From the IMG/VR virus record IMGVR_UViG_3300044712_002668, positions 62,001 to 126,000 of that record: DNA of 64,000 nt; one strand, written 5' to 3'. Positions within the stretch are counted from its first letter, which is position 1, and the number at the start of each line of letters is the position of its first letter. Under the pieces are notes generated by a model. It saw only the letters and a program-made list of their open reading frames with translations. It searched no databases and was not told where the DNA came from. Positions 3-41,330 of the stretch are shown piece after piece. The translations under genes were made by a program, and so were the position numbers.

Positions 3-506
3 TATAGTCGTTCAATTGCTATTTATTGTTACTATATATTAGAAGCATCTCTACCTGCAGCAGGAACGTATACATGTAGGTTCAAATCAAACGCAGGTTA
101 TGCTGGTGGCGTGGCTGTTTACAGCATGTCCAATGTAGCCCAATCTGCTCCTAATACATTGGCCACTGCTGGTAACTCTCGTAACCCAGACCTTACAGGT
201 CGTTATACTTTAGCTGATGGTACCAAAACATTTGGATGGACGCCTGGAGGTAGCTATTCACACTATGAACAGGTTGCTACATATATAAGTGAAGTTAGCG
301 GAGGTGATGGGGATATATTATACCTTGATTCTACAGCTACCGAAATCAATAGTACCAATACACCTGATACACAAACACCAGCACAAACAGATACATATGG
401 CACAATTAATATGACAGGTAGTACCTATCAATGGGGATCTCGTATTCTAGTAGCTGGAACTGGTGCGGTTGTTGATAACGCAGCAATAATGGGAGCTACT
501 TTCTAA
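3..506 (+). CDS. Partial (5'-truncated) Thr/Gly/Ser-rich protein, probably virion-associated
   Basis: Frame of ORF 111..506 is open back to the window edge; beta-rich T/G/S composition. Confidence 0.45.
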   Translation, partial: YSRSIAIYCYYILEASLPAAGTYTCRFKSNAGYAGGVAVYSMSNVAQSAPNTLATAGNSRNPDLTGRYTLADGTKTFGWTPGGSYSHYEQVATYISEVSGGDGDILYLDSTATEINSTNTPDTQTPAQTDTYGTINMTGSTYQWGSRILVAGTGAVVDNAAIMGATF

Positions 507-524
507 TAGTTTTGCATATGGTTG

Positions 525-1919
525 ATGAACATCTTTAGAGCCATATGTTTTTATGTGTTTTTCCTTGCCATAAATGGTCTATTTATATTCTTTGATTTCG
601 TTGTTAAACAAAGAAAAACAGGTTCATTACGTGAGCGTCTGCAATATTTATTAGAATCTTCTTTAAAACATGAATTCTTTAAAGAAAGAATTGGTAGTTT
701 TCTTGAAAAGAATAAAGATGTAAATGATGAAGAGTTTTTTAAGAACTGGAAAGAGTTACCAATCTTAACAAAACCAGATTATGTTTATATAAATATTGAA
801 GGTAAATATCCTAAAATATCAAATAACTTCTTTGTGGCTTTGTATCAACTTTGGAGTGGAAGGTTTACATATCAACTTGCCACTGGTGGTTCTTCAAAGC
901 TTCCCTTGACTGTAAGCATGGATAAACAACATGCATTTAAAATGGCTTTTTCATTTTTCCTTTGTTGGTATAAAATGGGATGGCGACCTGGCCAAAAAAT
1001 TCTTATATATTATCCTGATAAAATATATGATCTTGAAGTTTTCAAACATTATAGGGTTTTATTTGACTGGATTGGTGTAAGGTTCCATACGTTTTCAAAA
1101 ATAGATGTTGAAGATTTTATTAAACAACTAAACTCATATCAACCAAGTATATTGATAATTTTTCCATCTCCTTTAAATATACTTTCAAATAAAATTCATA
1201 AAAAGAATCTTGCTAGTTTTTGGCAGCCTAAATTTATCAATGTAAGTGGAGAGACATTATTCAAATGTCAAAGAGATAACATTCAGCGTATATTTTATAA
1301 ATCAAAACTAGATGATTCTTATGGTTCTGTAGAATTGGGAGAGATTGCTCATGAAAAATACCCAGGATTATTGGAAGTTTTTGATCATCATGTGTTTGTA
1401 GAGACCATTGATGCTGAAGATGGTAAAAAAGAAATGATTGCTACCGTCTTTGGAAACGGATACTTCCCATTCATTAGATATAAAATGGGCGATTTAATGA
1501 ATATTATTGAAAAAGATGGAAAGCAATATCTTTGCAATATTGATGGAAAAGCTAGTAACAAAATGAAACTTGGAAAAGAGATAATTTATCCTAGAGATCT
1601 TGATAAGTGTATTACAGAGATAAATAAAGTATTGAATCCAAAATATCCTGTTATTATAGATGCTCGCCTCATAAAAGATGAACACACTATAACCTTATCA
1701 ATTATTTTAAGTGGGAAAATACACAAACTATTATTAAATGTTGTAGAACATAAGGCACAGCAGGTGTTTAAAGAAAGGTTTGGAACCCGTCCTAATATAG
1801 ATTTTGTAGAAATTTTCAAGCATGATTATAGATTGAAGTACAGGGCATTGGTAGATAAAAAAGATGAGCACGAATGGGCGGGTGGGATTATAGGACAAGA
1901 GGATAAAATGAGGCTATAA
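525..1919 (+). CDS. Phenylacetate-CoA ligase / CapK-like adenylate-forming enzyme
   Basis: LPILTK, ATGGSS (degenerate TSGS/T loop), SGETL, YGSVELG and PFIRYKMGD motifs typical of the PaaK/CapK family; hydrophobic N-terminus. Confidence 0.75.
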   Translation: MNIFRAICFYVFFLAINGLFIFFDFVVKQRKTGSLRERLQYLLESSLKHEFFKERIGSFLEKNKDVNDEEFFKNWKELPILTKPDYVYINIEGKYPKISNNFFVALYQLWSGRFTYQLATGGSSKLPLTVSMDKQHAFKMAFSFFLCWYKMGWRPGQKILIYYPDKIYDLEVFKHYRVLFDWIGVRFHTFSKIDVEDFIKQLNSYQPSILIIFPSPLNILSNKIHKKNLASFWQPKFINVSGETLFKCQRDNIQRIFYKSKLDDSYGSVELGEIAHEKYPGLLEVFDHHVFVETIDAEDGKKEMIATVFGNGYFPFIRYKMGDLMNIIEKDGKQYLCNIDGKASNKMKLGKEIIYPRDLDKCITEINKVLNPKYPVIIDARLIKDEHTITLSIILSGKIHKLLLNVVEHKAQQVFKERFGTRPNIDFVEIFKHDYRLKYRALVDKKDEHEWAGGIIGQEDKMRL

Positions 1920-1944
1920 TCAGGTATTATAGCGGAGGAATAAT

Positions 1945-2259
1945 ATGGGTATTACACCGTCAAAATCAAAAAATACATATAATCTTTTTCAGAGGGTTAC
2001 AATAAATAGTAGTAGTTTTTCAGCAACATCAGATATAACAGTTCCTTTCAAATCATCAAATTCTAATTGGAAGTTTCAATTTGAAGGAAGCGGTACTATT
2101 GAATATTCTTTTGACGGAGTCAATGTTCATGGGGATATGGATTCTACTCAAGCTTCAAAATCTTTGGATTTTTTGAATAGACACGTTTCTGCTGTTTGGT
2201 TTAGATTGAAAAGTGCTTCTGGTGGAGTGGTTGTTAGAGTTGAAGCATGGGCAGTCTAG
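1945..2259 (+). CDS. Small beta-sandwich hypothetical protein (possible virion protein)
   Basis: GGAGG RBS; 104 aa with an all-beta pattern. Confidence 0.45.
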   Translation: MGITPSKSKNTYNLFQRVTINSSSFSATSDITVPFKSSNSNWKFQFEGSGTIEYSFDGVNVHGDMDSTQASKSLDFLNRHVSAVWFRLKSASGGVVVRVEAWAV

Positions 2260-2310
2260 GTATAAAAAAGCATATATTCAGCTTACTTAACTTTCTTATT
2301 CGTTATATAC

Positions 2311-3408
2311 ATGAGCATGGCTTTGTTATTTCTTGACGCTAATGCTCATGTTGCTTTAAACCCTGCTGGATTGAAAGCTTTTAATGATTTTTCAAATTCC
2401 ACATTTGCAAGCCACGGCAATGCCATGGCTGCAAATTATTTGGGACGTGAAGCGGCTAAAGAATTAGAAAAAGCCCGCACAAAAATTGCCGAATTGATTG
2501 GTGCCAAAAGTCACAATCAAATAATATTCACATCTACTTGCACTCAAGCATGTGAATGGGGTTTGGATATCTTAAAAACACGTAATTATAAAAATGTTTT
2601 TGTTTCTCAACTTGAACATCCAGCAATAAGATATCATTTCCGTGATTTGTTTGGACAATCAGAATTGCATGTTACCAAAGATGGTGTTGCAATATGTGAA
2701 CAACCATATCCTGATAGTACTGCGGTTGTTTGTTTGCATGTGCAAAATGAAATAGGTACTATACAACCAATAGAAAATATAAAAGCAGATGTAGTTAGTG
2801 ATATGAGCCAAAGCTTGGCCAAACTTCCAATAAACATGTCTAAACTGTCCAATGTTAAATTGGCTATGTTTGCTGCTCATAAATTTGGCGGCCCTTCTAG
2901 TTTAGGTTTCATGTATATTCAAGATACTGATTGGTGGAAAGAATTTGGCAGCGGTAGTAGATATTATTTTGATAGAGCTGGAAGCCCAGATGTTGTTTCA
3001 GCAATTATGACCGCTGCATCTTTAGAACATGCAATGAAAACCATGCCAGAACGTTATGATCGCATGGTTCGTTTCAGAAACACTCTTGAACCAGAACTAG
3101 AAAATTTAGGATTTAAAATAATAGGAAAGAATACTACAAGATTACCTAATACAACATTTATACAATTAAAAAAGCGTATGGGTCCATATGTTATGTCACA
3201 ACTTGAATCTGAAAACATATATGTTGGATTAGGTTCTGCTTGTGGCTCAATGAATACAGGTTCCAGTCCTGTAATGAATGCATTAGGCTATGGCGGTACA
3301 GCCCATGATTTTCTCCGTATATCTCAATTTGGAGAATATGCTGAAAAAGAAGCTAAAACAGTGGCTGCAGCGATAGCCAAGTACTGTCCAAAATCAGATA
3401 TTCCTTGA
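2311..3408 (+). CDS. iscS: Cysteine desulfurase (IscS/NifS-like, PLP-dependent class V)
   Basis: FLDANA, EHPAI, NEIGTIQP, AHKFGGP (PLP lysine), GSAC (catalytic Cys). Confidence 0.88.
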   Translation: MSMALLFLDANAHVALNPAGLKAFNDFSNSTFASHGNAMAANYLGREAAKELEKARTKIAELIGAKSHNQIIFTSTCTQACEWGLDILKTRNYKNVFVSQLEHPAIRYHFRDLFGQSELHVTKDGVAICEQPYPDSTAVVCLHVQNEIGTIQPIENIKADVVSDMSQSLAKLPINMSKLSNVKLAMFAAHKFGGPSSLGFMYIQDTDWWKEFGSGSRYYFDRAGSPDVVSAIMTAASLEHAMKTMPERYDRMVRFRNTLEPELENLGFKIIGKNTTRLPNTTFIQLKKRMGPYVMSQLESENIYVGLGSACGSMNTGSSPVMNALGYGGTAHDFLRISQFGEYAEKEAKTVAAAIAKYCPKSDIP

Positions 3409-3421
3409 TATATAATCTTTT

Positions 3422-3727
3422 ATGCTTGAAAAGATTTCATGTGAAATTTGTGGAGAGAACAATAAGGCGGTTCTTCATAAACATCATATAGTTGAACGTA
3501 CTAATCCTGATACAACCAATCATGATTATAACCTTGCTGTAATATGTTCAAATTGCCACAATTTAATTCATGACAAGCAGATAAATATTATAGGTTTGTT
3601 TCCATCAACCAAACCTCCATATGGAAGGATTTTGGTTTATGAAAGAGATGGAATATCAAATGTACCAGGATTGACAGAAACTTATTATAAAGCCAAAGCA
3701 CCATCAATGAGGATTTATGAAAAATGA
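3422..3727 (+). CDS. HNH endonuclease
   Basis: CEIC...HKHHI...NLAVICSNCHNLIH zinc/HNH motif. Confidence 0.85.
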   Translation: MLEKISCEICGENNKAVLHKHHIVERTNPDTTNHDYNLAVICSNCHNLIHDKQINIIGLFPSTKPPYGRILVYERDGISNVPGLTETYYKAKAPSMRIYEK

Positions 3728-4004
3728 TAAAGATAAAGAAACAATACAAGAAATTCTTAAAAAAGCTCGTGCTCAAGGGGTAGAGGAAAAAGTAAAGAAG
3801 ATAATTTCAAAATATGAAGACTCTATCAAGTCAGCCAAAGATGAAAACGAGCGTCATCATATTGCTGTTTTAGGATTGGTTGAATTGCATAAAACTATTG
3901 GATGCGTTGGCCCTCTTATCGTTGATGGTGTTGAGATTCTTCCCGCTGATCCTTCATATCAAGAAGCAATAAATCTTAATAAACGCTTGGTTAATTTGGA
4001 TTGA
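3717..4004 (+). CDS. Hypothetical protein
   Basis: ORF overlapping the previous stop, with GAGG RBS. Confidence 0.6.
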   Translation: MKNDKDKETIQEILKKARAQGVEEKVKKIISKYEDSIKSAKDENERHHIAVLGLVELHKTIGCVGPLIVDGVEILPADPSYQEAINLNKRLVNLD

Positions 4005-4040
4005 ACCTTGCATAATCAGTCATTAACAAGAGGAAAGATT

Positions 4041-4295
4041 ATGAAAGGTGAAAAGTATATTGGTAAGGTTTGTTGGTTTGATTCTAAACTTGGATATGGA
4101 TTTTTATCTCGTCAAGGTGAAAAGGATTTATTCATTCATTGGTCAGATATTCAAAGTGAAGGTTTCAAAACCTTAAAGAAAGGTCAAGAGGTTGCTTACT
4201 CTATTGGTTTGAACAACCGAAAACAACCAAAAGCTATTGAGGTTGTCGTACTCAATTCAGAAGAAGACGGTTCAGATGTTGAAAAAGAAGACTGA
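4041..4295 (+). CDS. Cold-shock domain protein
   Basis: GKVCWFDSKLGYGFL (RNP1), DLFIHWSDI (RNP2), GFKTL; ATG 4041 follows a GAGGA RBS. Confidence 0.92.
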   Translation: MKGEKYIGKVCWFDSKLGYGFLSRQGEKDLFIHWSDIQSEGFKTLKKGQEVAYSIGLNNRKQPKAIEVVVLNSEEDGSDVEKED

Positions 4296-4719
4296 ACGAG
4301 AACTTTGGATTACCAACATATCAAGAAAACATGACGTATCTTTGTCAGATTTATGTTTGACTATAAGACGTGGTCAAAGTATAAATCTTCTTGATAGGAG
4401 AAATAGGTATACCGAAGAACAAATTAAAAACTCAATTGAAAGCGGGTCTATTTTCAAAAAAAATTCCCTGATAAAAATCAGGGAAGTTGCTCCTGTAATA
4501 TTTAATTATCGTCTTGATATTTCAAATGACAGATCTAGCTTGAATACAATTCACCATAAACTGGAAATTGAAAATCCAAAATATGAAGAGTTGGATTTTG
4601 ATACTATGACTAGAGAGTCTGATGAAAAGTATGCCCAAGAGAATGCTGAGATGGATTTATTGGATACAAAACCCACTTTGTTTATAGATCCTAAATTTAA
4701 GAAATTGGAAGAGGAATAA
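4276..4719 (+). CDS. Hypothetical protein
   Basis: ORF 4237..4719; first ATG at 4276. Confidence 0.55.
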   Translation: MLKKKTERELWITNISRKHDVSLSDLCLTIRRGQSINLLDRRNRYTEEQIKNSIESGSIFKKNSLIKIREVAPVIFNYRLDISNDRSSLNTIHHKLEIENPKYEELDFDTMTRESDEKYAQENAEMDLLDTKPTLFIDPKFKKLEEE

Positions 4720-4733
4720 ACCAGCATTTAAAC

Positions 4734-5096
4734 ATGGGAACTACATATATTTTTGCAAATCCAGGTCAAGTTGTACGTTTGGCTGTTCAAACTGTTGATG
4801 GGTATGGTAACCGTGCAGATGGGTATGTTCCGGTAGTTCAAAGCGTTTTGTTCCCAGACCTGTCTCCAGCTTCTAGCTATCCTTTAAATATGACAAGGAT
4901 TGATACCGGGTTTTTCGTTCATGGTGTTCAAATCCCTTCCGGCTCAACTTCTGTAGGAACTTACCTCATAAGTATTTATTATCAAACTGATTATACTTAT
5001 CCTGATGGCTATCAGGATGGCACACACCCTGTCTGGGAAACCTTTGCCATCCAAGTAGCTAAACCATTTGGTAATACCAGCGTTTCCCCTATTTGA
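4734..5096 (+). CDS. Small Ig-like putative virion protein with 3 DGY motifs
   Basis: Beta-strand pattern resembling the N-terminal domain of 6370..7269; VDGYGNRADGY and PDGY. Confidence 0.55.
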   Translation: MGTTYIFANPGQVVRLAVQTVDGYGNRADGYVPVVQSVLFPDLSPASSYPLNMTRIDTGFFVHGVQIPSGSTSVGTYLISIYYQTDYTYPDGYQDGTHPVWETFAIQVAKPFGNTSVSPI

Positions 5097-6315
5097 GTAT
5101 TGTAAGATACTCTGAAGAACGCGTTGTGGCGGTATATAACCAGCGTCTGTAGGTGTCATCATTTACAGGGGCTGGTTTTTCATTGTATAATATGACGTTG
5201 TCAGCTTGTGAGCCTTGCATCTTATGCACGGTAAGCGCATAACCATAATCAAACAATAATCCAACCTCGCTCCAATGCATTACATACATTCCAAAGGGCT
5301 CCAACTCCGAAAATGCTTTGAAAGTCTTTGGAAACCCAAACTGATGCTTGCAAATGCGTTTTGATTTTGTCTCAAAATCCTCAAATGGAAATCTTACCTT
5401 GAAATCATAATAATGATTCTCTACCTCCATAGCGGATTCTAATAAAAATCCACGATAACCATTGTATATTGGGGTTTTTCTATTCGAAGAGTTTCTTAAA
5501 CAGATTACAACATCATTTGTTACCGGATGTTTACTCTCATGCCCAAATATCATTTTCCGTATAACGGAATTCAATCTATTACGGGTACTGTTGGTGTAAC
5601 AAAGAACGGCATTGTTTAATACATCTTCAGGTTTTATGTTTTTCTTGAATGTCCTAGACAAAACATTGGAACATTCACTCCGTCCTAATATTTTCACATA
5701 CTTAGAGCTTTCGATATTAGGAATTTTTCCAGTTTCTCTAATTCTCATAGAGAGATTTATGATTGGATTTGATTCTGCTTGGCGGTGGATTTTTTCTAGT
5801 TTGATATCTGGAGATCCCATCAAATTGAAATTACCATCTATAGGTGGTAACTGTCCATGATCACCAATAGCCAGAATAGGTTTACCATAAGAAGCTAAAT
5901 CATTGAAGATATCCTGAGAAACCATAGAAGCCTCATCGATAACGATGATATCGGTTTCAAGCATATCTTTTTTCATCCAATGGATAACTTCACCATCTTC
6001 ATTTTCTATTGGGGAATATATTAGGCGATGAATAGTTCCACAATAATGTTTATCTACTGATACGCCTGATTCTGAAAGTTTTTGCCTTATTACAGATGAG
6101 GCTTTTCCAGATAAGGCACAAAAAGCAAATCTTATTGCTGTTTCAAATGATTTTGCAATAATAGATATTACAGTGGTTTTACCTGAGCCAGCGTAACCGG
6201 CAAAAGTCAGTAAATCTGAACTTTTCTGAGAAGAAACTACTTTCTTTCCTGTAGCCAACCATTCTGCAATCAAGTCAAATGCTTCTTGTTGATCTTTAGA
6301 TAGAGTAATATTCAT
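5089..6315 (-). CDS. dda: SF1B helicase, Dda/RecD2-like
   Basis: Walker A GYAGSGKT, DEASMV, GDHGQLPP, HRQA, YALTVHKMQGS, YTATTR. Confidence 0.9.
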   Translation of the reverse strand: MNITLSKDQQEAFDLIAEWLATGKKVVSSQKSSDLLTFAGYAGSGKTTVISIIAKSFETAIRFAFCALSGKASSVIRQKLSESGVSVDKHYCGTIHRLIYSPIENEDGEVIHWMKKDMLETDIIVIDEASMVSQDIFNDLASYGKPILAIGDHGQLPPIDGNFNLMGSPDIKLEKIHRQAESNPIINLSMRIRETGKIPNIESSKYVKILGRSECSNVLSRTFKKNIKPEDVLNNAVLCYTNSTRNRLNSVIRKMIFGHESKHPVTNDVVICLRNSSNRKTPIYNGYRGFLLESAMEVENHYYDFKVRFPFEDFETKSKRICKHQFGFPKTFKAFSELEPFGMYVMHWSEVGLLFDYGYALTVHKMQGSQADNVILYNEKPAPVNDDTYRRWLYTATTRSSEYLTILK

Positions 6316-6369
6316 ATTTAGGGTAATACCCTATCGAGTATTACCAGACCTCTCGACACTGAAGTAAAA

Positions 6370-7269
6370 TCAATACAGTTGTCTCTGTCTGAGAGTTCTC
6401 AAGCGCCTGAATTGTGGGCTTGCCCCAGCTACGAAAGACAATACTCCAAGACCTAACGGACTAGGACGCATATTTACCTTTATTAGTTTTACTTTTTCCC
6501 ACAAGTTATCAAATTCTTTCTGGTATTGGTTCATAAGCATATCAGAAATTGTAGGTGGAGTAAAACTGATACCATTATCCTGTATCTGGAATTCTCTACC
6601 TCTTTCGATCAATGCTTGAGCACCAATAGAGTACACAAAAGCAGCTTGAACGAATACGTCATGAAACTGTTCAATGATTGGTGTATCTTCAAAAGTAAAA
6701 TATGTAAATGTTGGAGTTTCGTTGAATAAAGATAAACCTCTTGCTATAAAGGTTACCAACTCATCTACTGTAAAAATATCACAATCTTTATAGATCTTGT
6801 TTCCATATTCATCTGTAGTTGGGCGTTTACCTTGACTCTTCAATCTTGCTCTTAATGATTTCAAGATATTGTTTATATTACAGATAGCTATTTGTGTATA
6901 ATTAAATCCTGGGTCATCTCCGAGATGTTTGTAGCCATCAGTGTTCAAAGCTGGAACTTGTGTAGTGCCAACTTCAAAATTGAACTCACCAATTACTTGA
7001 AAACCTTCTAGAGTACCTTGCCATACATCTTTCCAGACACCTAGAGCTGGAAATAAACCAACGCTATAAAGAAATTGATACTCACCAACACCAATTTTCA
7101 TTACACCCTGGGACGTGGGGCCAATAGCTACACCTCCACTAGGTTGAATAACAGACACTAATGGAAAGGAATCCAAGTCAGCAGGATTACCATCCGAATC
7201 ACGAAATTTGGCTCTCAGGGCAACAGTATCCCCTGGTTGTATCATAGCAGATCTGGGGTTGGTACTCAT
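6370..7269 (-). CDS. Putative head-tail connector/neck protein (Ig-like N-terminus plus helical C-terminus)
   Basis: Likely start MSTNPRS at 7269; Ig-like N-domain; helical C-domain ending in basic RRLRTLRQRQLY; structural context. Confidence 0.45.
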   Translation of the reverse strand: MSTNPRSAMIQPGDTVALRAKFRDSDGNPADLDSFPLVSVIQPSGGVAIGPTSQGVMKIGVGEYQFLYSVGLFPALGVWKDVWQGTLEGFQVIGEFNFEVGTTQVPALNTDGYKHLGDDPGFNYTQIAICNINNILKSLRARLKSQGKRPTTDEYGNKIYKDCDIFTVDELVTFIARGLSLFNETPTFTYFTFEDTPIIEQFHDVFVQAAFVYSIGAQALIERGREFQIQDNGISFTPPTISDMLMNQYQKEFDNLWEKVKLIKVNMRPSPLGLGVLSFVAGASPQFRRLRTLRQRQLY

Positions 7270-7319
7270 ACTTATATACAAAGATATTCGCCATCGGGGC
7301 ATAAATTGGCTTCTTAAAG

Positions 7320-8639
7320 ATGGAAAAGAATCTTATTAAAATTGAAGAGCTTGTGGCTAGTTTTACAAAATCTGCTGGGTTTTGGGATTTTTTGAAAAGA
7401 CAACCAGCAGCTCCATTGGCTGCAGCAGAGACTGCTTTAAGAGAATCTGCTGTTTCAGGTGGTGCCGCTGAAAGAGTAGCTGCTGAACAAGCTCAAAGAG
7501 CTTTGTTTGAATCTCAGCAACAAAAATTAATTAATGAGATTAATGCTAATAGAACCAAACTAAATGCCGGTAACTTAGCAGATGCTGAATTAAAAACGCT
7601 TCGGGAAACTATTGATAAACAAATTCAAGAACAAACCGGTTTAAAAGGCAAACTAGAGGCGCTTGAAGCTGCAGAAAAAGCTGCATCGATAGAGCCTCAT
7701 GCTGTTACCGATCCTGCTGCTGCATCAGGAGCTGCTAAACCACAATCTCCATCAACAATTATAGATGAAACTGTAAAAAAGTTTTATAAAGAAAACCCAG
7801 GCGCAACTATAAGAGATTTTCCACAAGAATTAATGAATGCGTTGGTTGAAAAAACTGGTTTAACACCAGAACAAATTGGATCTAAATTAACAAATTCTTT
7901 ATCATCAGTAAAAATGACAGAAGGGCGTACAGCTTCTGCTTTGTGGTGGGCCCAAACATGGGCAGAACTTCGTCCTGGCGTTATTCTATCTGGTATGACC
8001 CCTCCTCAAAAAATGGCATGGGTTGTAGGTTCTGGAATAGCTTTATATCTTTGGCATTTATTCGGTTCTTCCCCATCAGCCTCATCTACTCCCGGAAAAA
8101 ATACTATTGGTCAAATTACATCCCAACGCTCTGCTGGATTGGGTCAATCTACAAGAAAAAATCTTTCTTTATTGAAAGATATTCAAAATACACCAGCCCC
8201 CACCCCATTGGGTTCAAGCAGATTCAATACGGGAGCTGTTGGCACTCCGGCTCCAACACCTGGATTAGTACAGGATAGTAGCCAATCCTTATTGAAGGGG
8301 TTGATGAAGAGACAGAGTAGATTCGATGCTTTGACAAAATTTGCTGAAAACGTTTCTTTAAACGCTGGGGTTGATCAAGTTTTGGCCGCATTAACTCAAC
8401 TTGAGAATATCAAATCATTTGATATGGAGGACCCAACTCAAGTATTCAGTGCTGTGGAAAAAATCCGTGCGCTTGAAGCATCATGTAATGCATTGTTGCC
8501 TCAAATATTACAAGTTCATACTGATGATCCTGTAGAGCAGGAAAAATTGAGAACTGGTAGCAAAACTCTCACAGAGTTGCTTGGAACTATTGCAAATTTA
8601 AGACAAACAACTGAGCAAGCCAAATCAAAGGTAGCGTAA
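7320..8639 (+). CDS. Hypothetical helical/coiled-coil protein with one hydrophobic segment (possible internal virion/ejection protein)
   Basis: Ala/Gln/Glu-rich helices; TM-like MAWVVGSGIALYLW. Confidence 0.45.
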   Translation: MEKNLIKIEELVASFTKSAGFWDFLKRQPAAPLAAAETALRESAVSGGAAERVAAEQAQRALFESQQQKLINEINANRTKLNAGNLADAELKTLRETIDKQIQEQTGLKGKLEALEAAEKAASIEPHAVTDPAAASGAAKPQSPSTIIDETVKKFYKENPGATIRDFPQELMNALVEKTGLTPEQIGSKLTNSLSSVKMTEGRTASALWWAQTWAELRPGVILSGMTPPQKMAWVVGSGIALYLWHLFGSSPSASSTPGKNTIGQITSQRSAGLGQSTRKNLSLLKDIQNTPAPTPLGSSRFNTGAVGTPAPTPGLVQDSSQSLLKGLMKRQSRFDALTKFAENVSLNAGVDQVLAALTQLENIKSFDMEDPTQVFSAVEKIRALEASCNALLPQILQVHTDDPVEQEKLRTGSKTLTELLGTIANLRQTTEQAKSKVA

Positions 8640-9454
8640 TGAAAAAAATTGATAAAATTGTAAAGTCAGTTGATCAATATAATGACTCTATTAAAAAAGT
8701 AGCATGGATACATATACCCGCAGCATTGGCTGCAGTTGGAATAACTGGAGCTGGTATTGCTGGAGTTGGTTGGTCTACTATTGCTACAGTTGGTGTTACG
8801 GTTCTTACTTTTGCTGGAATAGCTTCAAACCAATATCTCAGTTCTGCAAAAGAAAACCTTAAAACAATTCATGATGATATAAAGAAAGCAGTTGATACTG
8901 TTGAACTTCAAAAAACAGAAGAGGGAGCTGCAATATCAAAATCAGATGAAAGAATTTTAAATAATTTTCTTGAAAAGACAAAAGTTTTAAATACTAAAAT
9001 TGATAAATTATTACAAGAAGCAGATAAACCAATCCCAACAGGTAAAACAACTTCCAAAGAGGAGAGTGTTGAAAGAGAAAAACTATTAAGGGCTAGAGCC
9101 ATCTTATTTCAAGATTTTATTTCAACATATTATTCTTATAGTGAAGCAAGACAATCCATTTTAACATTACTTGAAACAAAACAAGGTATTTTATCAGGTA
9201 TTGGTTCTTTTTTCCAAATGATTGGAGGCACCATGGGTGCTGCAGGAAACAGATGGAATTATTTCTTCAGAGTCACAAATGCTTTTGGGGTTCCACTAAG
9301 CTCTTTTGTGGATGGTTTGAAAATTCAAAACAATGCTATTCTTGAAGCTTTGAAAAGTCTTCAAGAACAAAAACAAGATTTACCAGAACATGCATTGAAA
9401 GCTCCGGATCCTTCAAAATCCAAAGAAGAACAAATTGCAGGTATAAAGATATGA
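8639..9454 (+). CDS. Hypothetical protein with a Gly/Ala-rich hydrophobic hairpin (possible ejection protein)
   Basis: WIHIPAALAAVGITGAGIAGVGWSTIATVGVTVLTFAGIA; translationally coupled to the previous gene. Confidence 0.45.
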   Translation: MKKIDKIVKSVDQYNDSIKKVAWIHIPAALAAVGITGAGIAGVGWSTIATVGVTVLTFAGIASNQYLSSAKENLKTIHDDIKKAVDTVELQKTEEGAAISKSDERILNNFLEKTKVLNTKIDKLLQEADKPIPTGKTTSKEESVEREKLLRARAILFQDFISTYYSYSEARQSILTLLETKQGILSGIGSFFQMIGGTMGAAGNRWNYFFRVTNAFGVPLSSFVDGLKIQNNAILEALKSLQEQKQDLPEHALKAPDPSKSKEEQIAGIKI

Positions 9455-9990
9455 ACGAGCAAGAGATAGTTTTATCAGATATCGATCATGAGAAATATTT
9501 TCCCATGATTGAACAATTAAAGGATGAGATTCGAAATGATCCTGTAATAAAAAAAGTATTCAAGGATTATGATATTGATTTCTCTGAATTTGATATGATT
9601 CCTATTTGTGTTGCTCAACTGCCTGTTTCTGCAAGAACTGACCATGCTGTAATCTATCTTAATGAGGGGCTTCTTAAAGAAGAAGATTTTTTAAAAAATG
9701 CACATTATCTTGTTCATGAAATGACTCATTGGTGTCAACAAACTACAGGAAATAAACCTACTCCTGGTAGTGATGCCGATGATTATCTTTATAACCCAGC
9801 AGAAGTTGAAAGTTTTCAAAATCAAACGCAATATATCTCTCACAGTATAGGAGATGAAGCTGCTGAAGAGTATATAAATCAGGTTCTTGATAAACATGAA
9901 GTTACCGATAAAAAAGAAAGAAAAGATAGAACTGAAAAATTACTTAATTTGGCAGGGCAATTAGGGATTGTTGTAAACAAGAACGGATAA
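9451..9990 (+). CDS. Zincin-like metallopeptidase domain protein
   Basis: LVHEMTHWCQ (HExxH) with downstream NPAEVES. Confidence 0.7.
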   Translation: MNEQEIVLSDIDHEKYFPMIEQLKDEIRNDPVIKKVFKDYDIDFSEFDMIPICVAQLPVSARTDHAVIYLNEGLLKEEDFLKNAHYLVHEMTHWCQQTTGNKPTPGSDADDYLYNPAEVESFQNQTQYISHSIGDEAAEEYINQVLDKHEVTDKKERKDRTEKLLNLAGQLGIVVNKNG

Positions 9991-10015
9991 TTTGGCATCT
10001 TCTTGAGGTGCTGAC

Positions 10016-11614
10016 ATGGTTTGTTCTGTTCCTGTAAAATTTCTTTTTTATAACCCAATACTACAAGGTACTAGAACCGTAAATGCTACCGGGGATGGTT
10101 ACTCCATCTCTTTAAGTTGGTATAAAGCTGCCATTTCACCTCCATATTATAAATTGTATTATAATATATATTATTCTTCTTTTCAAGAATCTGTTTTTAC
10201 TGAGGGTGTGAAATTTATAGCTCCATCAACAATAGATCAGGTATTGTTGGAAGGTATATTCAAACCAGGAGATATTTATTTCTTTGCGGTTAGACCTACA
10301 GGGTTTGAACCTAACACGTTTTTATTTGATTCCTTACCAGATGCCGGAAATGGTTTGAAAATCTATCCTGAGTCATTGTTGGCGGATACAATCACGGCTA
10401 CAGATACTATTATTCCATTGATTGATGTAACTTCATTCCCTCCATATGGTTTGATACAAATCGGTTATGAAGCAATAAAGTATTCTTCAGTTGATTTGGT
10501 AAATAACTTATTGATATTATCATCTGTAGCGGATCGTGGTGTATACGGAAGCACCCCAAGAATACATACACCGGATGGATATGATGGATCTTTATATCAT
10601 AATCCTTTGGTTTATATGTTCAAAGGTTTTGAGGATGGAAATATTTCTATTGGTTTGGCTGAAAACAAGTTCAAAGAACAATATGCCTACACCAACACTG
10701 ATGGATACAGAGACAGACAGGATATACTGACATCTGATAAAGATGTTACTATAGTTGAAAATTCAAATGATGGTTTTCCGATATTTGACTATGCAGGATG
10801 GAGAAGAACTGATCCTGCTGATATGTTAGCTGGTAAATGTATTGGCTCATATTATGGTGGGGAATACGGATGTGCAGATGGGTATGATAGTGATGGTAGG
10901 ATTCGTGGGCTTAGTTTTCAGGATATAAATAATCAACGTCAAGAGGTGTTGTTAAACGTTACTGGAGAGCCTGTAGTTCTTTTCAAGAGAATGTGGAAGG
11001 GCAAGACATCAAAACAATATGACTCATCCCGTGAGAACACCATTTATAGGGGTTTTGATAATTATGGTACAGAATTTGTAAGTGGTTATGAACAATATTT
11101 CAATTCAAGACGTTCTGATGGTAGAATCATGGTAAGGTTCGGGCCAACGAAAGAGAATTATGAGCGTCAGGAGCCTGGTATTGAAAATGTATTCGTTCCT
11201 AATTGTTGGACATTGGTTACTCCAGCTTTGAAGGATGGAGATTTTATCATTCGTTTCAATGAAGATGGAAGCGAAGAGTGGAGATATGAGGTTCTGGATG
11301 TGGATAGGAACAGAACGGTGCTGTTGGAAAGCGGAGCACAGAAGTTTACAGTTTCCAGAGTGAGAAAGACAGATCCAATTTATCAAGTCAGGGCAATACG
11401 TGATACCAGTATGTTCCCTAAGGAATTATTGACTGGAGTTGGAAGCGCTGGGAAATTGTTGCCTCATTTGCATAGAATTGTGGTTAATGAAGGAATTTTG
11501 ACTGTATCACAAATTAATCAAATGACATCAATATCAAATGGGCACAATCATGCAATAGTCAATGGTGTGGTACAAACAGTTCTAGGACATACTCATAGTA
11601 TCATCTTACCATAA
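10016..11614 (+). CDS. Putative virion neck/head-completion protein with FN3-like N-terminus and His-rich C-terminus
   Basis: ISLSW...YNIYY...YFFAVR FN3 pattern; 4 DGY; C-terminal HLH/GHNH/GHTH; GAGG RBS. Confidence 0.5.
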   Translation: MVCSVPVKFLFYNPILQGTRTVNATGDGYSISLSWYKAAISPPYYKLYYNIYYSSFQESVFTEGVKFIAPSTIDQVLLEGIFKPGDIYFFAVRPTGFEPNTFLFDSLPDAGNGLKIYPESLLADTITATDTIIPLIDVTSFPPYGLIQIGYEAIKYSSVDLVNNLLILSSVADRGVYGSTPRIHTPDGYDGSLYHNPLVYMFKGFEDGNISIGLAENKFKEQYAYTNTDGYRDRQDILTSDKDVTIVENSNDGFPIFDYAGWRRTDPADMLAGKCIGSYYGGEYGCADGYDSDGRIRGLSFQDINNQRQEVLLNVTGEPVVLFKRMWKGKTSKQYDSSRENTIYRGFDNYGTEFVSGYEQYFNSRRSDGRIMVRFGPTKENYERQEPGIENVFVPNCWTLVTPALKDGDFIIRFNEDGSEEWRYEVLDVDRNRTVLLESGAQKFTVSRVRKTDPIYQVRAIRDTSMFPKELLTGVGSAGKLLPHLHRIVVNEGILTVSQINQMTSISNGHNHAIVNGVVQTVLGHTHSIILP

Positions 11615-11637
11615 AGTCAATATTGGAGCATAAAGAT

Positions 11638-12225
11638 ATGACAAATCGGTATACAGGCAGCGGAAGGCAAATAGAAGGCGGAATGTTAGCCACACATAAG
11701 CAGGATTTCAACGCTCATGTGACTGGTGGAGATTGGCGTCATAAAGCAGATCAGGTTGATATGAATCCTGTTTTGACCGCTCCTTATAATGGAACAGATG
11801 TTCAAACTGTTTTGAGCGAATTGGTTACAACAGTTTCGGGTCAAAGAATTGGAGAGGGACAGGCTTCTGTAAATTTTTTGGGTGTAACTGTTCTATATCC
11901 AATAAACATGAATCCTGCACAATATCCGCAATACAGGGTTGAGTGTACAAGTACAGGAACATTAGCTACCAATAAAACAATAAATATATATTTTTCACCA
12001 GCTATGACGTTGGGAAATCAATTTATACTTATGGTTAAAACCAGTGCGGTGACATTTGGAAGTTATCATATTGAAATTGCCTTTCCTGATTTTGCAGCCA
12101 ATGCAATTTTCAGCGGAATTGATAATCAGATATATACACAGGGGTATTTCAAATATAACATAATTATATCAAAGCCTTTTTCTGGTGCAGATCAATTATT
12201 TATTACAAGAACGGATTATCTATGA
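11638..12225 (+). CDS. Putative fibre/collar-associated virion protein
   Basis: FNAHVTG..RHKADQV fibre-type N-terminal motif; likely start at ATG 11638. Confidence 0.4.
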   Translation: MTNRYTGSGRQIEGGMLATHKQDFNAHVTGGDWRHKADQVDMNPVLTAPYNGTDVQTVLSELVTTVSGQRIGEGQASVNFLGVTVLYPINMNPAQYPQYRVECTSTGTLATNKTINIYFSPAMTLGNQFILMVKTSAVTFGSYHIEIAFPDFAANAIFSGIDNQIYTQGYFKYNIIISKPFSGADQLFITRTDYL

Positions 12226-13439: not shown

Positions 13440-13451
13440 GGAGCGTAAGAC

Positions 13452-13964
13452 ATGGATCCAACAACATATTTAATAAATCAAGTAAACAGTTTATTCACAA
13501 TTCAATTTCTTGTTTTTGGAATTGTTATAGGAGTTGTTACTCAAATTCTAAGAACGCTTATTGAAGGAATATGTCTTCGTATAGAACCTTATCTTCCTCA
13601 GTGGATGGATAAATATAAAGAACATATAAAACTTAATTGGTCAAATGTTATTTTGAGGGGTTTACCAATATTGGTCGGTGTTTTAATATCATACTTTATT
13701 GTTTCATATCCATACCCTGCAATTTTTGCAACATCTGTATGGGGAAGGGTATTTTTCGGCATAGTAGCTGGTAGCGCTGCAAATATTATCTATCCTTTCT
13801 TTCGTTTTTATTTGAAAACATACCTTCCAGATAATATCAAAGATCAAGCTAATGGTTTATTGGTACAAGCAGGGATAAAACCAAAACAACTTGAAAATAA
13901 AGAAGTTGAAAATCCAGTACCAACCACAGATGATGCAAACAAAGAACCACAAGAAAAATCATAA
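13452..13964 (+). CDS. Membrane protein, holin-like (about 3 TM segments)
   Basis: Three hydrophobic segments, charged C-terminal tail, AGGAG RBS. Confidence 0.5.
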   Translation: MDPTTYLINQVNSLFTIQFLVFGIVIGVVTQILRTLIEGICLRIEPYLPQWMDKYKEHIKLNWSNVILRGLPILVGVLISYFIVSYPYPAIFATSVWGRVFFGIVAGSAANIIYPFFRFYLKTYLPDNIKDQANGLLVQAGIKPKQLENKEVENPVPTTDDANKEPQEKS

Positions 13965-13973
13965 TGGAATAAT

Positions 13974-19805: not shown

Positions 19806-19814
19806 AACTCTAGG

Positions 19815-19843
19815 AGTCTAACCTACCTCATCCTACTTGTCAA
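19815..19843 (-). promoter_or_regulatory. Sigma70-type promoter for the lipoprotein gene
   Basis: Minus strand TTGACA-N17-TAGACT, 9 nt before the ATG at 19805. Confidence 0.75.
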
Positions 19844-19863
19844 CATCTTTTTTCTTTACACTT

Positions 19864-21443: not shown

Positions 21444-21456
21444 TCTATAAATCTCC

Positions 21457-21516: not shown

Positions 21517-21539
21517 CTAATATTTTTGCAGTTTTGTAA

Positions 21540-26343: not shown

Positions 26344-26662
26344 GCAACAATTCTATTATGACATGTTTTTAGAACGTGGAATATTACCCGGTGACCAATT
26401 CTATGAGGATATTAACCCATATTTAAAGAGATGGTTATTCGAGGCATGGGCTTATAAGAGAGAAAGGGAATATACAGAGAAACGTTCTCTAGCTATTCTT
26501 GTAGGTTCATTCCATAATCCAGAAGCAGCGCAAAAGATGGTCAAAGATGAGAACCCTGATGTATCAATTACAAGCGATGAATGGGAGCAATCATCTGAGA
26601 TGTTATTGACAGAGCTGCCAAAGGAGAAGAAGAGCCGTCGAAAACGCAAAATTATAGAGTAA
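26327..26662 (+). CDS. Second tail assembly chaperone segment (T-like; possibly a frameshift product)
   Basis: Overlaps the previous ORF in the +1 frame; GTG start without an adjacent SD. Confidence 0.5.
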   Translation: MVQEPEQQFYYDMFLERGILPGDQFYEDINPYLKRWLFEAWAYKREREYTEKRSLAILVGSFHNPEAAQKMVKDENPDVSITSDEWEQSSEMLLTELPKEKKSRRKRKIIE

Positions 26663-26665
26663 AAT

Positions 26666-28900: not shown

Positions 28901-28923
28901 TCTGCATAAGTTAACATATATGC

Positions 28924-29856: not shown

Positions 29857-29873
29857 AGATATAAAGGTATAGT

Positions 29874-37125: not shown

Positions 37126-37126
37126 A

Positions 37127-39175: not shown

Positions 39176-39178
39176 TAT

Positions 39179-40825
39179 ATGGCAAGTGATCAAATTAAAT
39201 GGCTTAGTATATATGATGATTTTTCAAACCTTGATGTTGATACAGATTCGTTGTATCAAAAATTCATACAACCAATTGAGAATTACAGAAGTAATACCGT
39301 AGTAAACGTGTATGATAAACAAGATGATTCTAAAAATCCAAAGCCAATAAAATCAAACTCTGAACAAACAGAAAGCAGGGCTCATGCTTTTTACAGGATG
39401 CTTGGACTTCCTGTTATTGCTTCTGATTCTTTGTATTATAATCCTGGGTTTCCTAGAAGCGCAAATATATCAGTAGATAAAAATAGCGTAAAACAACAGG
39501 TTTCAAAAACAGTAACAGATATGCAGGCCACAAGGGAGAGGGGCTGCGCAAAAAGAAAAAACATTTTTAAAAACGGAATGAAACCAGCATCGTTATATTC
39601 TTTGATGTTATCATTGTTAAGAATAAAACATAAGTTTCAGGTTATGGATAAGTTTTCTTCTTGGAATGATAAAGACCTTCAAAACATATCCGTTGAAGAT
39701 ATTAAAAAACAAATAATCAAGATGTATAAAAATACATCAGATGGCTCTACCATAAACATGTCAGAGTTTCCTGACATTCCACACAATCATATTTTAAGAC
39801 CCCTTACTACAGATCCTGTCATCTGTGAGAATATTACACCTCCAAATAATATTGTATGTTCTCCCTTTCTAAAAGAGAACTCTGATACTGAGATAGATAG
39901 AAATGTGTTTCTAAAGCGTCCTGGTATTGAGTTTATTTTGCGATTGAGATTGAAACAACAACAGGTTCCTATAACAGACGCTGAAATAACAAGTTTTTTT
40001 GAGCTTTCAGATGCAGCCTTCAAAAATGGTACAAAAAGCAGTTCAGATCCTTCGTATGTTGTAGATCCTGATAAGTACTCATTTTCATTAAGTGAAACAA
40101 CAACTGTAAAATTACTTAGAACGATTAAAGGCTTGGTAAGAGAATATGTAGAACATTGTAATGTTCTTGAGCGTCTTGAGAAAGAATTGATTTGGGTTCC
40201 TATGTGTTCTGAATCAGGACCAGAGAATGGAACAACTATAAATGCTTCTTTTATAAAACAAGAAAGTGTAAGTTATAAAAATAATATCGATGTAAAAATA
40301 GAAAACACAACAGTTGATGATTTGATTGCTACAAGACAACAAGATTTAAACAGTATTTTCAATAACACTGGAAATAATACTATAGATTATTCTAGTTTTA
40401 CAATATCAGAATTCAACAATGTTGAGTCAAACATTTCTAAAAACCTAGCAAGGTTAAAATCTCAAAGGAACTCTAAGCGTACAGATGCCAGCAATCGTAT
40501 GAAAGCTATTGAGATTATTACTGGGGAGGTAAGCGGTCTTGGATTGATTGATGTGTTGGCTATTTATGCTGCCTTATGGTCAGTTGATGTTACAGTATTA
40601 TTGGGATTGCTTGATACAGATGCTTTGAGCAGATTGAAAACCATTACTACACTAAACTCACCAGATATACAGGCTGCTGTTTCTGGAAACGGAATGACCG
40701 TAACGAATGCGATACAAGCTTTAGAAGATCGTGTGATAGTTATTTTAAATGAGGTTGATAACATTATGGCTGGAACACTACATAATGCAGCAAATTCTCA
40801 TACAGGTACAGTTATCAGTAAATGA
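39179..40825 (+). CDS. Hypothetical baseplate-region protein
   Basis: 548-aa ORF between spike-associated genes and the gp25-like gene. Confidence 0.5.
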   Translation: MASDQIKWLSIYDDFSNLDVDTDSLYQKFIQPIENYRSNTVVNVYDKQDDSKNPKPIKSNSEQTESRAHAFYRMLGLPVIASDSLYYNPGFPRSANISVDKNSVKQQVSKTVTDMQATRERGCAKRKNIFKNGMKPASLYSLMLSLLRIKHKFQVMDKFSSWNDKDLQNISVEDIKKQIIKMYKNTSDGSTINMSEFPDIPHNHILRPLTTDPVICENITPPNNIVCSPFLKENSDTEIDRNVFLKRPGIEFILRLRLKQQQVPITDAEITSFFELSDAAFKNGTKSSSDPSYVVDPDKYSFSLSETTTVKLLRTIKGLVREYVEHCNVLERLEKELIWVPMCSESGPENGTTINASFIKQESVSYKNNIDVKIENTTVDDLIATRQQDLNSIFNNTGNNTIDYSSFTISEFNNVESNISKNLARLKSQRNSKRTDASNRMKAIEIITGEVSGLGLIDVLAIYAALWSVDVTVLLGLLDTDALSRLKTITTLNSPDIQAAVSGNGMTVTNAIQALEDRVIVILNEVDNIMAGTLHNAANSHTGTVISK

Positions 40826-40831
40826 GGCTAT

Positions 40832-41263
40832 ATGTCTTTTGATCTTAAATTGGAAAATGGAGATTTGCTTGTAAAGTCAGGGGACTTGCAAACCGTTGAA
40901 AATAATGATAAATTAGTTCAAGATATCTTGAAAATTTTAAGCACCCCTATGGGTGGTAACCCATTCTTTCCTGCATATGGCTCTCCAATCAATTCCGCTA
41001 TGATTGGAAATTATTACGATATAGATTTTGTAAGGAATGTAACTACACAACAGATAAGAACAACGTTGGAGAGATTGCAGCAATTACAAGCGGATCAATT
41101 AAGGAACAACCAGATAGTAACACCTTTTGAACAGCTTGCTGCGATACAAAGTGTAAGTGTAAACAATATACCTCAAGACCCTAGATACTATGCTATATCC
41201 TTGACCGTTATTTCAAAGGCTTTTCGTAGGGTTGATATTCCTTTTATGGTAGTTTCTGCTTAA
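40832..41263 (+). CDS. Baseplate wedge / sheath initiator (gp25-like)
   Basis: DLKLENGDL, KLVQDILKILSTPMG.NPFFPAYGS. Confidence 0.82.
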   Translation: MSFDLKLENGDLLVKSGDLQTVENNDKLVQDILKILSTPMGGNPFFPAYGSPINSAMIGNYYDIDFVRNVTTQQIRTTLERLQQLQADQLRNNQIVTPFEQLAAIQSVSVNNIPQDPRYYAISLTVISKAFRRVDIPFMVVSA

Positions 41264-41330
41264 CAATGCATTGTTTTGCATACCTTGAGCAGCACTTGGC
41301 CATTCAGATATATGGAAGCTTGAGGTATAA

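What the first reader, a model, noticed from the sequence alone, without database searches (positions are those of the whole stretch)
506..41281. Recurrent intergenic motif ATA-N5-G(C/T)AT: candidate phage late promoter driving leaderless mRNAs
Exact matches at 506, 1916, 2262, 4716, 9987, 11620, 29859 and on the minus strand at 7287-7276. One-mismatch copies at 7301, 21520 and 41270. Most sit in short gaps before structural genes. Where there is no SD (genes at 525, 4734, 7269, 7320, 11638, 21540) the ATG lies only 6-8 nt after the motif. Where an SD exists (1945, 10016, 41331) the gap is longer. This is the pattern expected of a -10-like element for a phage-encoded sigma factor or RNAP with transcription starting at or near the AUG.
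Basis: partly seen in the sequence, partly recalled or inferred. Interest (0 to 1): 0.6.

Follow-up and report, generated by a model that had tools for sequence, protein, structure and literature searches.

The report
Leaderless-gene promoter motif in huge phage
A short two-part DNA motif (AATAW-N4-GYAT) sits exactly 6 bases before the start codons of several virion-module genes in this uncultivated ~340-450 kb phage and its relatives, and its geometry is that of a promoter that starts the mRNA on the AUG itself, so these genes are very likely translated without a ribosome-binding leader.

Summary
By itself the pattern is not enriched in the window (32 hits against 30.5 expected). Counted over upstream regions only, it does not survive a look-elsewhere control. 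Comparative data settle the question. In 57 non-redundant loci of related uncultivated huge phages, ATA[AT]-N4-G[CT]AT starts exactly 18 nt before the ATG in 46 of 948 genes. Other offsets have 0-9 genes and control patterns 0-1.

The consensus is A-19 A-18 T-17 A-16 W-15 T-14 ... G-10 Y-9 A-8 T-7. An AT-rich 6-mer follows, then a pyrimidine at -1 (64 of 65 genes), then the A of ATG. This is the usual distance from a -10 element to a transcription start, so the mRNAs should be leaderless.

A profile built only from the relatives ranks window sites 11620, 9987, 4716, 7287(-) and 506 among the top seven of 128 kb. Sites 1916, 21520 and 41270 are plausible. Sites 2262 and 7301 are weak. Site 29859 belongs to a second conserved motif, TGATATAT at -16 to -9.

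The phage has no RNA polymerase gene of its own, but a sigma-70-family gene is conserved in all five relatives searched. Which sigma reads the motif, and "late" timing, are inferred. No RNA data exist.

The parts
11620..11631 (+). Class A promoter element ATATTGGAGCAT. The predicted transcription start is A11638, the A of the ATG of gene 11638-12225, so the mRNA is leaderless.
   Evidence: It has the best core score in 128 kb with a profile built only from relatives. The orthologous gene carries the motif at the same offset in about 20 relatives.
4716..4727 (+). Class A element ATAAACCAGCAT. The predicted start is A4734, the ATG of the 120-aa gene 4734-5096 (leaderless). The TAA inside ATAA is the stop of gene 4276-4719.
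   Evidence: Core rank 3 of 128 kb. GAATAA-N4-GCAT-N6-ATG is conserved upstream of the ortholog in at least 12 relatives while N4 and N6 vary.
7276..7287 (-). Class A element ATATCTTTGTAT on the minus strand. The predicted start is A7269, the ATG of gene 6370-7269 (leaderless). This fixes the start at 7269 rather than the longer ORF start at 7302.
   Evidence: Core rank at most 6. It lies in a 50-nt divergent gap. The ~300-aa ortholog in L007, L043, L044, L045, L049, L056 and L075 has the motif at offset 18.
506..517 (+). Class A element ATAGTTTTGCAT. The predicted start is G524, 1 nt before the ATG at 525 of gene 525-1919.
   Evidence: Core rank at most 7. No SD is present. No ortholog was found in the fetched loci, so this site lacks comparative support.
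9987..9998 (+). Class A element ATAATTTGGCAT. The predicted start is G10005, giving an 11-nt leader GAGGUGCUGAC that begins with an SD, then the ATG at 10016 of the conserved 532-aa gene.
   Evidence: Core rank 2. GGATAAT(T/C)T(G/A)G(C/T)AT is conserved in relatives, where it lies 6 or 9-10 nt before the ATG.
1916..1927 (+). Probable class A element ATAATCAGGTAT. The predicted start is G1934, giving an 11-nt leader GGAGGAAUAAU before the ATG at 1945.
   Evidence: Mid-ranking core score, about rank 31. Similar copies with an SD lie upstream of the orthologs in L005-L007. The leader length matches site 9987.
21520..21531 (+). Degenerate class A element ATATTTTTGCAG (last base G). The ATG at 21540 lies 8 nt downstream. 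The 270-aa gene precedes the tail sheath gene.
   Evidence: Core rank about 32. Orthologs in L006, L008, L020, L035, L036 and L066 have the canonical motif at offset 18. The neighbouring gene is divergent.
41270..41281 (+). Probable class A element ATTGTTTTGCAT, 49 nt before the ATG at 41331 of the baseplate wedge gene, which has an SD-bearing leader.
   Evidence: Core rank about 35. ATAATCCGGTAT in G001 and ATTCTCAGGCAT in G004 lie at the corresponding spot upstream of the ortholog.
7301..7312 (+). Weak candidate ATAAATTGGCTT, 7 nt before the ATG at 7320.
   Evidence: The core score is matched by about 154 positions in 128 kb. No ortholog of gene 7320-8639 was found in the fetched loci. It cannot be told apart from chance.
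2262..2273 (+). Exact pattern match ATAAAAAAGCAT that is probably not a functional copy.
   Evidence: The core score is matched by about 74 positions. Orthologous aminotransferase genes carry the class B motif instead.
29858..29865 (+). Class B element GATATAAA, with the G 16 nt before the ATG at 29874 of the 1740-aa gene.
   Evidence: GATATA peaks 15-16 nt before the ATG in this genome and in relatives. The class A score of this site is poor.
3406..3413 (+). Class B element TGATATAT at -16 to -9 of the ATG at 3422 (HNH endonuclease gene). Its TGA is the stop of the aminotransferase gene.
   Evidence: TTGATATAT is conserved upstream of the ortholog in L005-L008. Position confirmed.
54259..54266 (+). 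Class B element TGATATAT at -16 to -9 of the ATG at 54275. No SD is present.

Best explanation
The motif is a promoter. Its full form is A-19 A-18 T-17 A-16 W-15 T-14, four variable bases, then G-10 Y-9 A-8 T-7, then a 6-nt AT-rich stretch ending in a pyrimidine, then a purine at +1. It has no -35 element.

At most copies the +1 purine is the A of the ATG, so the transcript begins with AUG and is translated as a leaderless mRNA. At some copies the start falls 1-3 nt before the ATG. At others it falls at the first base of a minimal 9-13-nt leader that opens with the SD.

The genes are packed tightly, without terminators and without an SD of their own. Each such gene therefore needs its own copy of the motif.

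The genes served lie in the virion module, so the class is probably late. The reader of the motif is most likely host core RNA polymerase carrying the phage's own sigma-70-family factor.

Shown here: the motif, its exact geometry and its conservation. Inferred: transcription starting there, the timing, and which sigma reads it.
For: Exact offset in independent genomes: 46 genes at offset 18 against 0-9 at other offsets, with controls at 0-1. GCAT 10 nt before the ATG is the top positional 4-mer in the close clade, 42 against 3.7 expected, above the SD words. The whole genome G001 replicates this.

Promoter geometry: T at -7 and A at -8, as in the last two bases of a -10 hexamer. The base at -1 is a pyrimidine in 64 of 65 genes, against 53% in the other genes. 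ATG follows 6 nt after the motif in 38 of 158 occurrences found without gene calls, and GTG or TTG are not among the common codons there.

The function does not depend on distance to the AUG. Among copies at other offsets, the base 7 nt after the T is a purine in 43 of 61. In the offset 27-31 group that base sits at the 5' edge of GGAG or GAGG. Site 41270 is conserved 45-50 nt upstream.

Context: 10 of 60 sites face a divergent neighbour, and only 12 of 60 overlap a stop codon.

Orthologous footprint: the motif positions are kept while N4 and N6 drift, across proteins 35-70% identical.

Window sites rank 1, 2, 3, at most 6 and at most 7 of 128 kb under a profile trained only on relatives.

Canonical -35/-10 promoter matches are below shuffled expectation in window 1-20000 (64 against 78.8).

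The phage has no RNA polymerase gene. Its sigma gene has regions 2 and 4 and is conserved in 5 of 5 relatives.

A -10 motif 6-7 bp upstream of ORFs is an experimentally established mark of leaderless genes (PMC12340547).
Against: No transcription start has been mapped, and no RNA run holds this phage.

A-11, the key base of sigma-70-type -10 elements, is not conserved (28 of 65), so recognition must be atypical.

The sigma has a region 4, but no -35 element was found.

The sigma is also present in G005, whose locus L072 shows no motif at offset 18, so sigma and motif do not co-occur cleanly.

The roughly 65 sites come from about 8 gene families, so they are not fully independent.

Strong motif copies also lie inside genes (window 5532(-) and 29196(-)).

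The functions of most served genes are unknown, so 'late' is weakly based.
Confidence: 0.68

Rival explanations
1. It is the same promoter with a different reader. The motif is recognised by a host sigma factor, alone or modified by phage proteins, and the phage sigma serves another gene class, for instance the TGATATAT class.
For: The phage sigma occurs in a relative whose locus lacks the motif. The sigma carries region 4, yet the motif has no -35 partner. Thermus phage phiYS40 makes leaderless middle and late mRNAs (PMC3594737); from memory, it does so with host polymerase and no sigma of its own.
Against: A-11 is not conserved and the -10 half is GYAT, unlike primary-sigma hexamers. The Bacteroidota-type TAnnTTTG box fits only at T-17, A-16 and G-10. 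Heavy SD use argues against such a host. The host is unknown, so this was not tested.
Confidence: 0.2
2. It is an RNA-level signal, not a promoter. The motif is transcribed from further upstream and acts in the mRNA in one of three ways. It could be the operator of a translational repressor like T4 RegA. It could be an SD-independent ribosome-loading or re-initiation signal after the nearby stop codon. It could be an endonuclease site that trims the mRNA to a near-leaderless 5' end.
For: The position relative to the AUG is fixed. 12 of 60 sites overlap the stop of the upstream gene, as expected for termination-reinitiation. The genes are tightly packed with no terminators, so read-through RNA containing the motif must exist.
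Against: The motif also occurs 21-50 nt upstream when an SD is present, and the conserved feature is then the distance to a purine at the SD edge rather than to the AUG. 10 of 60 sites face divergent genes, 3 of them with gaps of 11 nt or less. The pyrimidine at -1, purine at +1 and T at -7 have no reason to exist in an RNA operator. The motif is not complementary to the anti-SD sequence.
Confidence: 0.1
3. It is chance and composition. AT-rich gaps, TAA stops and the AT of ATG generate an apparent motif picked post hoc.
For: The window-wide count equals expectation. The look-elsewhere control gives 7 or more in 9 of 60 shuffles. Replication in the rest of the genome is weak.
Against: 46 genes sit at one exact offset in independent genomes, with reversed and complemented controls at 0-1. 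The result holds without gene calls. Orthologous footprints are seen. This may still apply to sites 2262 and 7301.
Confidence: 0.02

Closest known systems
Leaderless middle and late transcripts of Thermus phage phiYS40
   Same: A large myovirus whose middle and late mRNAs mostly lack a leader, so promoter and start codon are fused (PMC3594737).
   Different: From memory, phiYS40 uses host sigma-A promoters of ordinary -10 type and has no sigma of its own. Here the element is AATAW-N4-GYAT without a conserved A-11, only about 7% of genes use it, the rest have an SD, and the phage carries a sigma gene. phiYS40 shifts the host IF2/IF3 balance; this phage encodes two IF1 homologues, whose role is untested.
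-10 motif adjacent to ORFs in Deinococcus-Thermus (and leaderless genes of Actinobacteria)
   Same: The -10 element ends 6-7 bp before the start codon, no -35 is required, no SD is present, and transcription starts on the AUG (PMC12340547). The geometry is the same (T at -7).
   Different: Those motifs are TANNNT read by the primary sigma. Here the conserved bases are G-10 Y-9 A-8 T-7 plus an upstream AATAWT block at -19 to -14.
T4-type late promoter TATAAATA (gp55, gp33, gp45)
   Same: A short promoter without a -35 element, for virion genes of a large myovirus, read by a phage-encoded sigma-like protein on host core polymerase (from memory; review PMC2988020 was listed but not read).
   Different: The sequence and position differ. 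T4 late mRNAs have SD-bearing leaders. The sigma here has regions 2 and 4, unlike gp55, which from memory is region-2-like only.
Extended -10 promoters (TGnTATAAT)
   Same: The second motif, TGATATAT at -16 to -9, has TG, one base, then TATA, and needs no -35.
   Different: The last hexamer position (T-7 equivalent) is not conserved. The element sits one base further from the predicted start than the canonical one.
Late promoters of jumbo phages with their own multisubunit RNA polymerase (phiKZ, AR9)
   Same: Huge phage genomes with short, unusual late promoter motifs.
   Different: No RNA polymerase beta or beta-prime homologue was found here. AR9 leaders are 26-491 nt (PMC5312081), and no leaderless transcript was detected among the early-infection phiKZ transcripts mapped (PMC8244752).

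Membership tests
Promoters of leaderless genes (-10 element abutting the start codon) | The element ends 6-7 nt upstream of the start codon | tested here: met
   T of GYAT is at -7 in 46 canonical sites (65 with GYAT alone). Other offsets are rare.
Promoters of leaderless genes (-10 element abutting the start codon) | No Shine-Dalgarno sequence between element and start; the start codon is AUG | tested here: met
   The 6-nt gap is AT-rich. ATG is by far the commonest codon 6 nt after the motif (38 of 158), and GTG or TTG are not among the common ones.
Promoters of leaderless genes (-10 element abutting the start codon) | Start-site signature: pyrimidine at -1, purine at +1 | tested here: met
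   A pyrimidine at -1 in 64 of 65, against 53% in the other genes; +1 is the A of ATG.
Promoters of leaderless genes (-10 element abutting the start codon) | Primary 5' end of the mRNA mapped on the A of AUG | not testable with these tools
   No RNA run holds the sequence, and the phage is uncultivated.
Primary sigma-70 / sigma-A -10 hexamer (TATAAT, TANNNT) | Conserved T-12, A-11 and T-7 | tested here: not met
   T-7 is kept, but A-11 is 28 of 65 and T-12 is 27 of 65. G-10 is preferred instead.
Bacteroidota promoter (-7 box TAnnTTTG, -33 TTTG) | TAnnTTTG with a conserved TTT, a TTTG near -33, and a host that does not use SD | tested here: not met
   T-17, A-16 and G-10 align, but the TTT positions are T in only 26, 27 and 16 of 65. 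No upstream element was found. SD words dominate gene starts.
T4-type late promoter | TATAAATA at about -13 to -6 | tested here: not met
   The profile shows no such sequence. The gp55, gp33 and gp45 proteins were not searched for.
Jumbo-phage non-virion RNA polymerase late promoters (phiKZ, AR9) | Phage-encoded multisubunit RNA polymerase | tested here: not met
   PF00562 and PF00623 found nothing in the 336-kb record, while the control genomes all matched. The record is estimated 78% complete, so absence is not proven.
Extended -10 promoter (for the second motif TGATATAT) | TG one base upstream of a TATAAT-like hexamer that ends at -7 | tested here: inconclusive
   T-16 G-15 A-14 T-13 A-12 T-11 A-10 T-9: the TG and TATA fit, the last hexamer base is not conserved, and the register is shifted by 1.

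The most novel reading that the evidence does not exclude
A whole clade of uncultivated huge phages runs a private expression channel for part of its virion genes. A phage sigma would read a promoter with no -35 element (AATAW-N4-GYAT) that places the transcription start on the AUG. Phage-encoded translation factors (two IF1 homologues in this genome) would tilt host ribosomes towards these leaderless mRNAs. This would uncouple late protein synthesis from SD-dependent initiation, and from host or defence systems that target it.
Probability: 0.15. Interest if true: 0.75.

Novelty: new variant of a known kind. Interest (0 to 1): 0.55.

Why it matters
Promoters are essentially unknown for the huge uncultivated phages found in metagenomes. 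This work gives a defined, clade-wide consensus with single-base geometry. It can be used at once to correct start codons (for example 7269 rather than 7302), to mark transcription units, and to predict which genes are translated without a leader.

It also gives a testable pairing for a phage sigma of unknown specificity: the 216-aa sigma and a 13-nt element. It extends promoter-fused leaderless expression, known from Thermus phages and from Deinococcus and Actinobacteria, to a new phage group whose other genes use a classical SD.

Tried and rejected
A single-protein locus search with window 7320-8639 found no relatives.

GenBank phages hold no relative, by DNA or by the 532-aa protein.

The DNA holders are near-identical and would add little.

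I tried to name the served genes. Most have no family. Profile searches of the 532-aa and 300-aa families against solved structures gave nothing useful. A fold of the 300-aa protein had mean pLDDT 66.7 and gave only Ig-like domain matches plus a faint portal-adaptor hit. I therefore do not call any of them capsid or portal.

A search for a -35 partner found only a conserved coding word.

A CGTA/TACG positional peak in the motif-poor sub-clades was incoherent and partly duplicates.

My first dinucleotide-type shuffle barely changed the short regions and was discarded as a control.

One search failed on wrong coordinates and was not repeated. As a result, the second region-4-like ORF at G000:7508 was not characterised.

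The phiYS40 primary paper is not held, so a review is cited instead.

No complex prediction was attempted, because no protein-protein claim is made.

Full report
**What the window is.** The window is bases 62001-126000 of a 335,988-bp IMG/VR virus record. The record has 38% GC, 36 tRNA genes and a CheckV completeness estimate of 78%. It comes from a rhizosphere metagenome, and no RNA run holds it. The same contig is 454,833 bp long in the protein collection. No GenBank phage resembles it. The window carries a myovirus virion module: tail sheath at 22438-24921, a virion structural protein at 24944-25624, and baseplate genes at 40832-44567. It also carries a Dda-like helicase and a class V aminotransferase. 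Most other genes are orphans.

**Checking the observation.** Every listed copy is present, and the stated gaps to the ATG are right.
- The bare pattern ATA-N5-GYAT occurs 32 times in the window against 30.5 +/- 6.2 in shuffles.
- The excess is positional. Seven hits fall in 1,267 nt of oriented upstream regions against 0.42 expected, with none antisense.
It reaches 7 or more in 9 of 60 shuffles.
- Outside the window the genome gives 5 against 2.4. The window alone therefore does not prove the motif.

**Independent genomes.** The 532-aa protein at 10016-11614 has more than 500 homologues. I fetched 6 syntenic contigs and 66 IMG/VR loci. Fifty-seven of these loci are non-redundant and hold 948 called genes.
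- ATA[AT]-N4-G[CT]AT starts exactly 18 nt before the ATG in 46 genes. Other offsets have 0-9, and the reversed and complemented controls have 0-1.
- A positional word search that knows nothing of the motif puts GCAT at 10 nt before the ATG first in the close clade (42 against 3.7 expected), ahead of the SD words.
- Without gene calls, 38 of 158 AATAW-N4-GYAT occurrences are followed by ATG exactly 6 nt later.
- A complete relative, G001 (392 kb), gives 9 at offset 18 and none at offsets 11-31.
- At orthologous genes the motif bases are kept while the N4 and N6 bases change, across proteins 35-70% identical. These are the 112-aa gene (window 4734), the gene after the 532-aa gene (11638), the 270-aa gene (21540), the ~300-aa gene (7269) and the 532-aa gene itself.

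**Anatomy.** I conditioned only on GYAT at -10 to -7, which gives 65 genes.
- The profile is A-19 (49), A-18 (55), T-17 (60), A-16 (54), W-15, T-14 (42).
- Positions -13 to -11 are nearly free.
- The 6-mer before the ATG is AT-rich.
- Position -1 is a pyrimidine in 64 of 65 genes, against 53% in the other genes.
- No upstream partner element appears.
- Of 60 sites, 12 overlap the stop of the upstream gene, 36 follow a longer co-directional gap, and 10 face a divergent gene.

**Why a promoter for leaderless mRNA.**
- The T lies at -7 and the A at -8 relative to the A of ATG. That is where the last two bases of a -10 hexamer lie relative to a transcription start.
- The pyrimidine at -1 and purine at +1 are the usual start-site preference (my own knowledge).
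- A -10 motif 6-7 bp before ORFs marks leaderless genes experimentally in Deinococcus-Thermus (PMC12340547).
- There is no room for an SD in the gap.
- Copies at other offsets behave as a promoter would. For the 532-aa gene in several relatives, the predicted start is a G 3 nt before the ATG. In the offset 27-31 group it is the first base of GGAG or GAGG.
- In the window, 1916 and 9987 both predict 11-nt leaders that open with GGAGG and GAGGTG.
- Site 41270 lies 49 nt upstream and is still matched at the orthologous place in G001 and G004.
- An RNA operator tied to the AUG would not show this flexibility. I keep that rival at about 0.1.
- Canonical -35/-10 matches are below shuffled expectation in window 1-20000.

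**Which sites hold.** I scored the window with a profile built only from the relatives.
- Strong: sites 11620, 9987, 4716, 7287(-) and 506 are among the seven best core scores in 128 kb.
- Middling: sites 1916, 21520 and 41270 rank about 31-35. Orthologous copies support them.
- Weak: sites 2262 and 7301 are no better than 74-154 other positions.
- Different motif: site 29859 fits a second motif.
- Strong copies inside genes also exist at 5532(-) and 29196(-). These may be chance or internal starts.

**A second motif.** TGATATAT occupies -16 to -9 of the ATG.
- GATATA peaks at 15-16 nt in this genome (10 genes) and in relatives (21 genes at 15 nt, plus 15 at 14 or 16 nt).
- Position -1 is a pyrimidine in 17 of 21 genes.
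- It is conserved before the HNH gene (window 3406-3413) in L005-L008. It also occurs at 54259-54266.
- It resembles an extended -10 element, so it may be a second class of leaderless promoter.
- Orthologous genes sometimes swap classes. The ~300-aa gene has class A in the window and class B in L005.

**Who reads it.**
- The record has no multisubunit or T7-type RNA polymerase domain. The T7-type search had no positive control.
- It encodes a 216-aa sigma-70-family protein with regions 2 and 4, next to a DnaB-like helicase.
- Homologues at 30-62% identity are present in all five relatives searched.
- The missing A-11 argues against a primary sigma.
- The pairing of this sigma with the motif is nevertheless inference. 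G005 has the sigma, but its locus L072 shows no canonical motif.
- Some sub-clades carry AATAA-N4-GAAT before the 532-aa gene.
- 'Late' rests only on position in the virion module.

**Comparison and novelty.**
- Promoter-fused leaderless expression is known. phiYS40 makes most middle and late mRNAs without a leader (PMC3594737), and Deinococcus-Thermus genes do the same (PMC12340547).
- Jumbo phages with their own polymerases do not. AR9 leaders are 26-491 nt (PMC5312081), and the phiKZ early-infection map found no leaderless transcript (PMC8244752).
- Literature searches found no description of this motif or of leaderless genes in huge uncultivated phages.
- I therefore rate it a new variant of a known kind. 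The novelty lies in a new consensus and a new clade, with mixed SD-led and leaderless genes in one genome.

Noticed in passing
G000:C1:273752-273946 (+) and 188409-188606 (+), outside the window: Two IF1 (PF01176) homologues of about 75 aa are encoded by the phage. No IF3 C-terminal domain or ribosomal protein S21 was found. A link to leaderless translation is speculation.
   Followed up: partly
window 3406-3413, 29858-29865, 54259-54266; G000-wide: A second conserved upstream motif, TGATATAT at -16 to -9 of SD-less ATGs, has its own positional peak in this genome and in relatives. It may mark another temporal class.
   Followed up: partly
window 5089-7269: The ~300-aa conserved gene (6370-7269) is on the minus strand here but on the plus strand in all relatives. 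A Dda-like helicase (5089-6315) lies next to it. This is a local inversion, and the promoter motif moved with the gene.
   Followed up: partly
window 9992-10014: A 10-pair hairpin (G-T pairs allowed) joins part of the motif to the SD of gene 10016. It could form only in read-through RNA, not in RNA started at 10005, and might mask the SD there. Not tested.
   Followed up: no
L035:10001-12094, L036:10001-12049 and proteins P0026, P0038, P0052: In some relatives the 532-aa protein is 680-715 aa, with an insertion of about 150 aa after residue ~180. This could be an intein or homing-endonuclease insertion. LAGLIDADG and HNH genes are scattered in the same region of relatives.
   Followed up: no
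window 10016-11614: The most conserved protein of the region has invariant Cys residues and three C-terminal HxH pairs. It has no match in PHROGs, Pfam or solved structures. From memory, HxH repeats recall the metal-binding tips of T4 fibres.
   Followed up: partly
whole record: IMG/VR labels the 336-kb record 'provirus', while the same contig is 454,833 bp elsewhere. With 36 tRNAs and relatives of 300-460 kb, the trimmed part may be phage, not host.
   Followed up: no
G000:C1:184644-215020: All 36 tRNA genes lie in one 30-kb block, all but the first three on the minus strand. Two have odd anticodon loops by ARAGORN.
   Followed up: no
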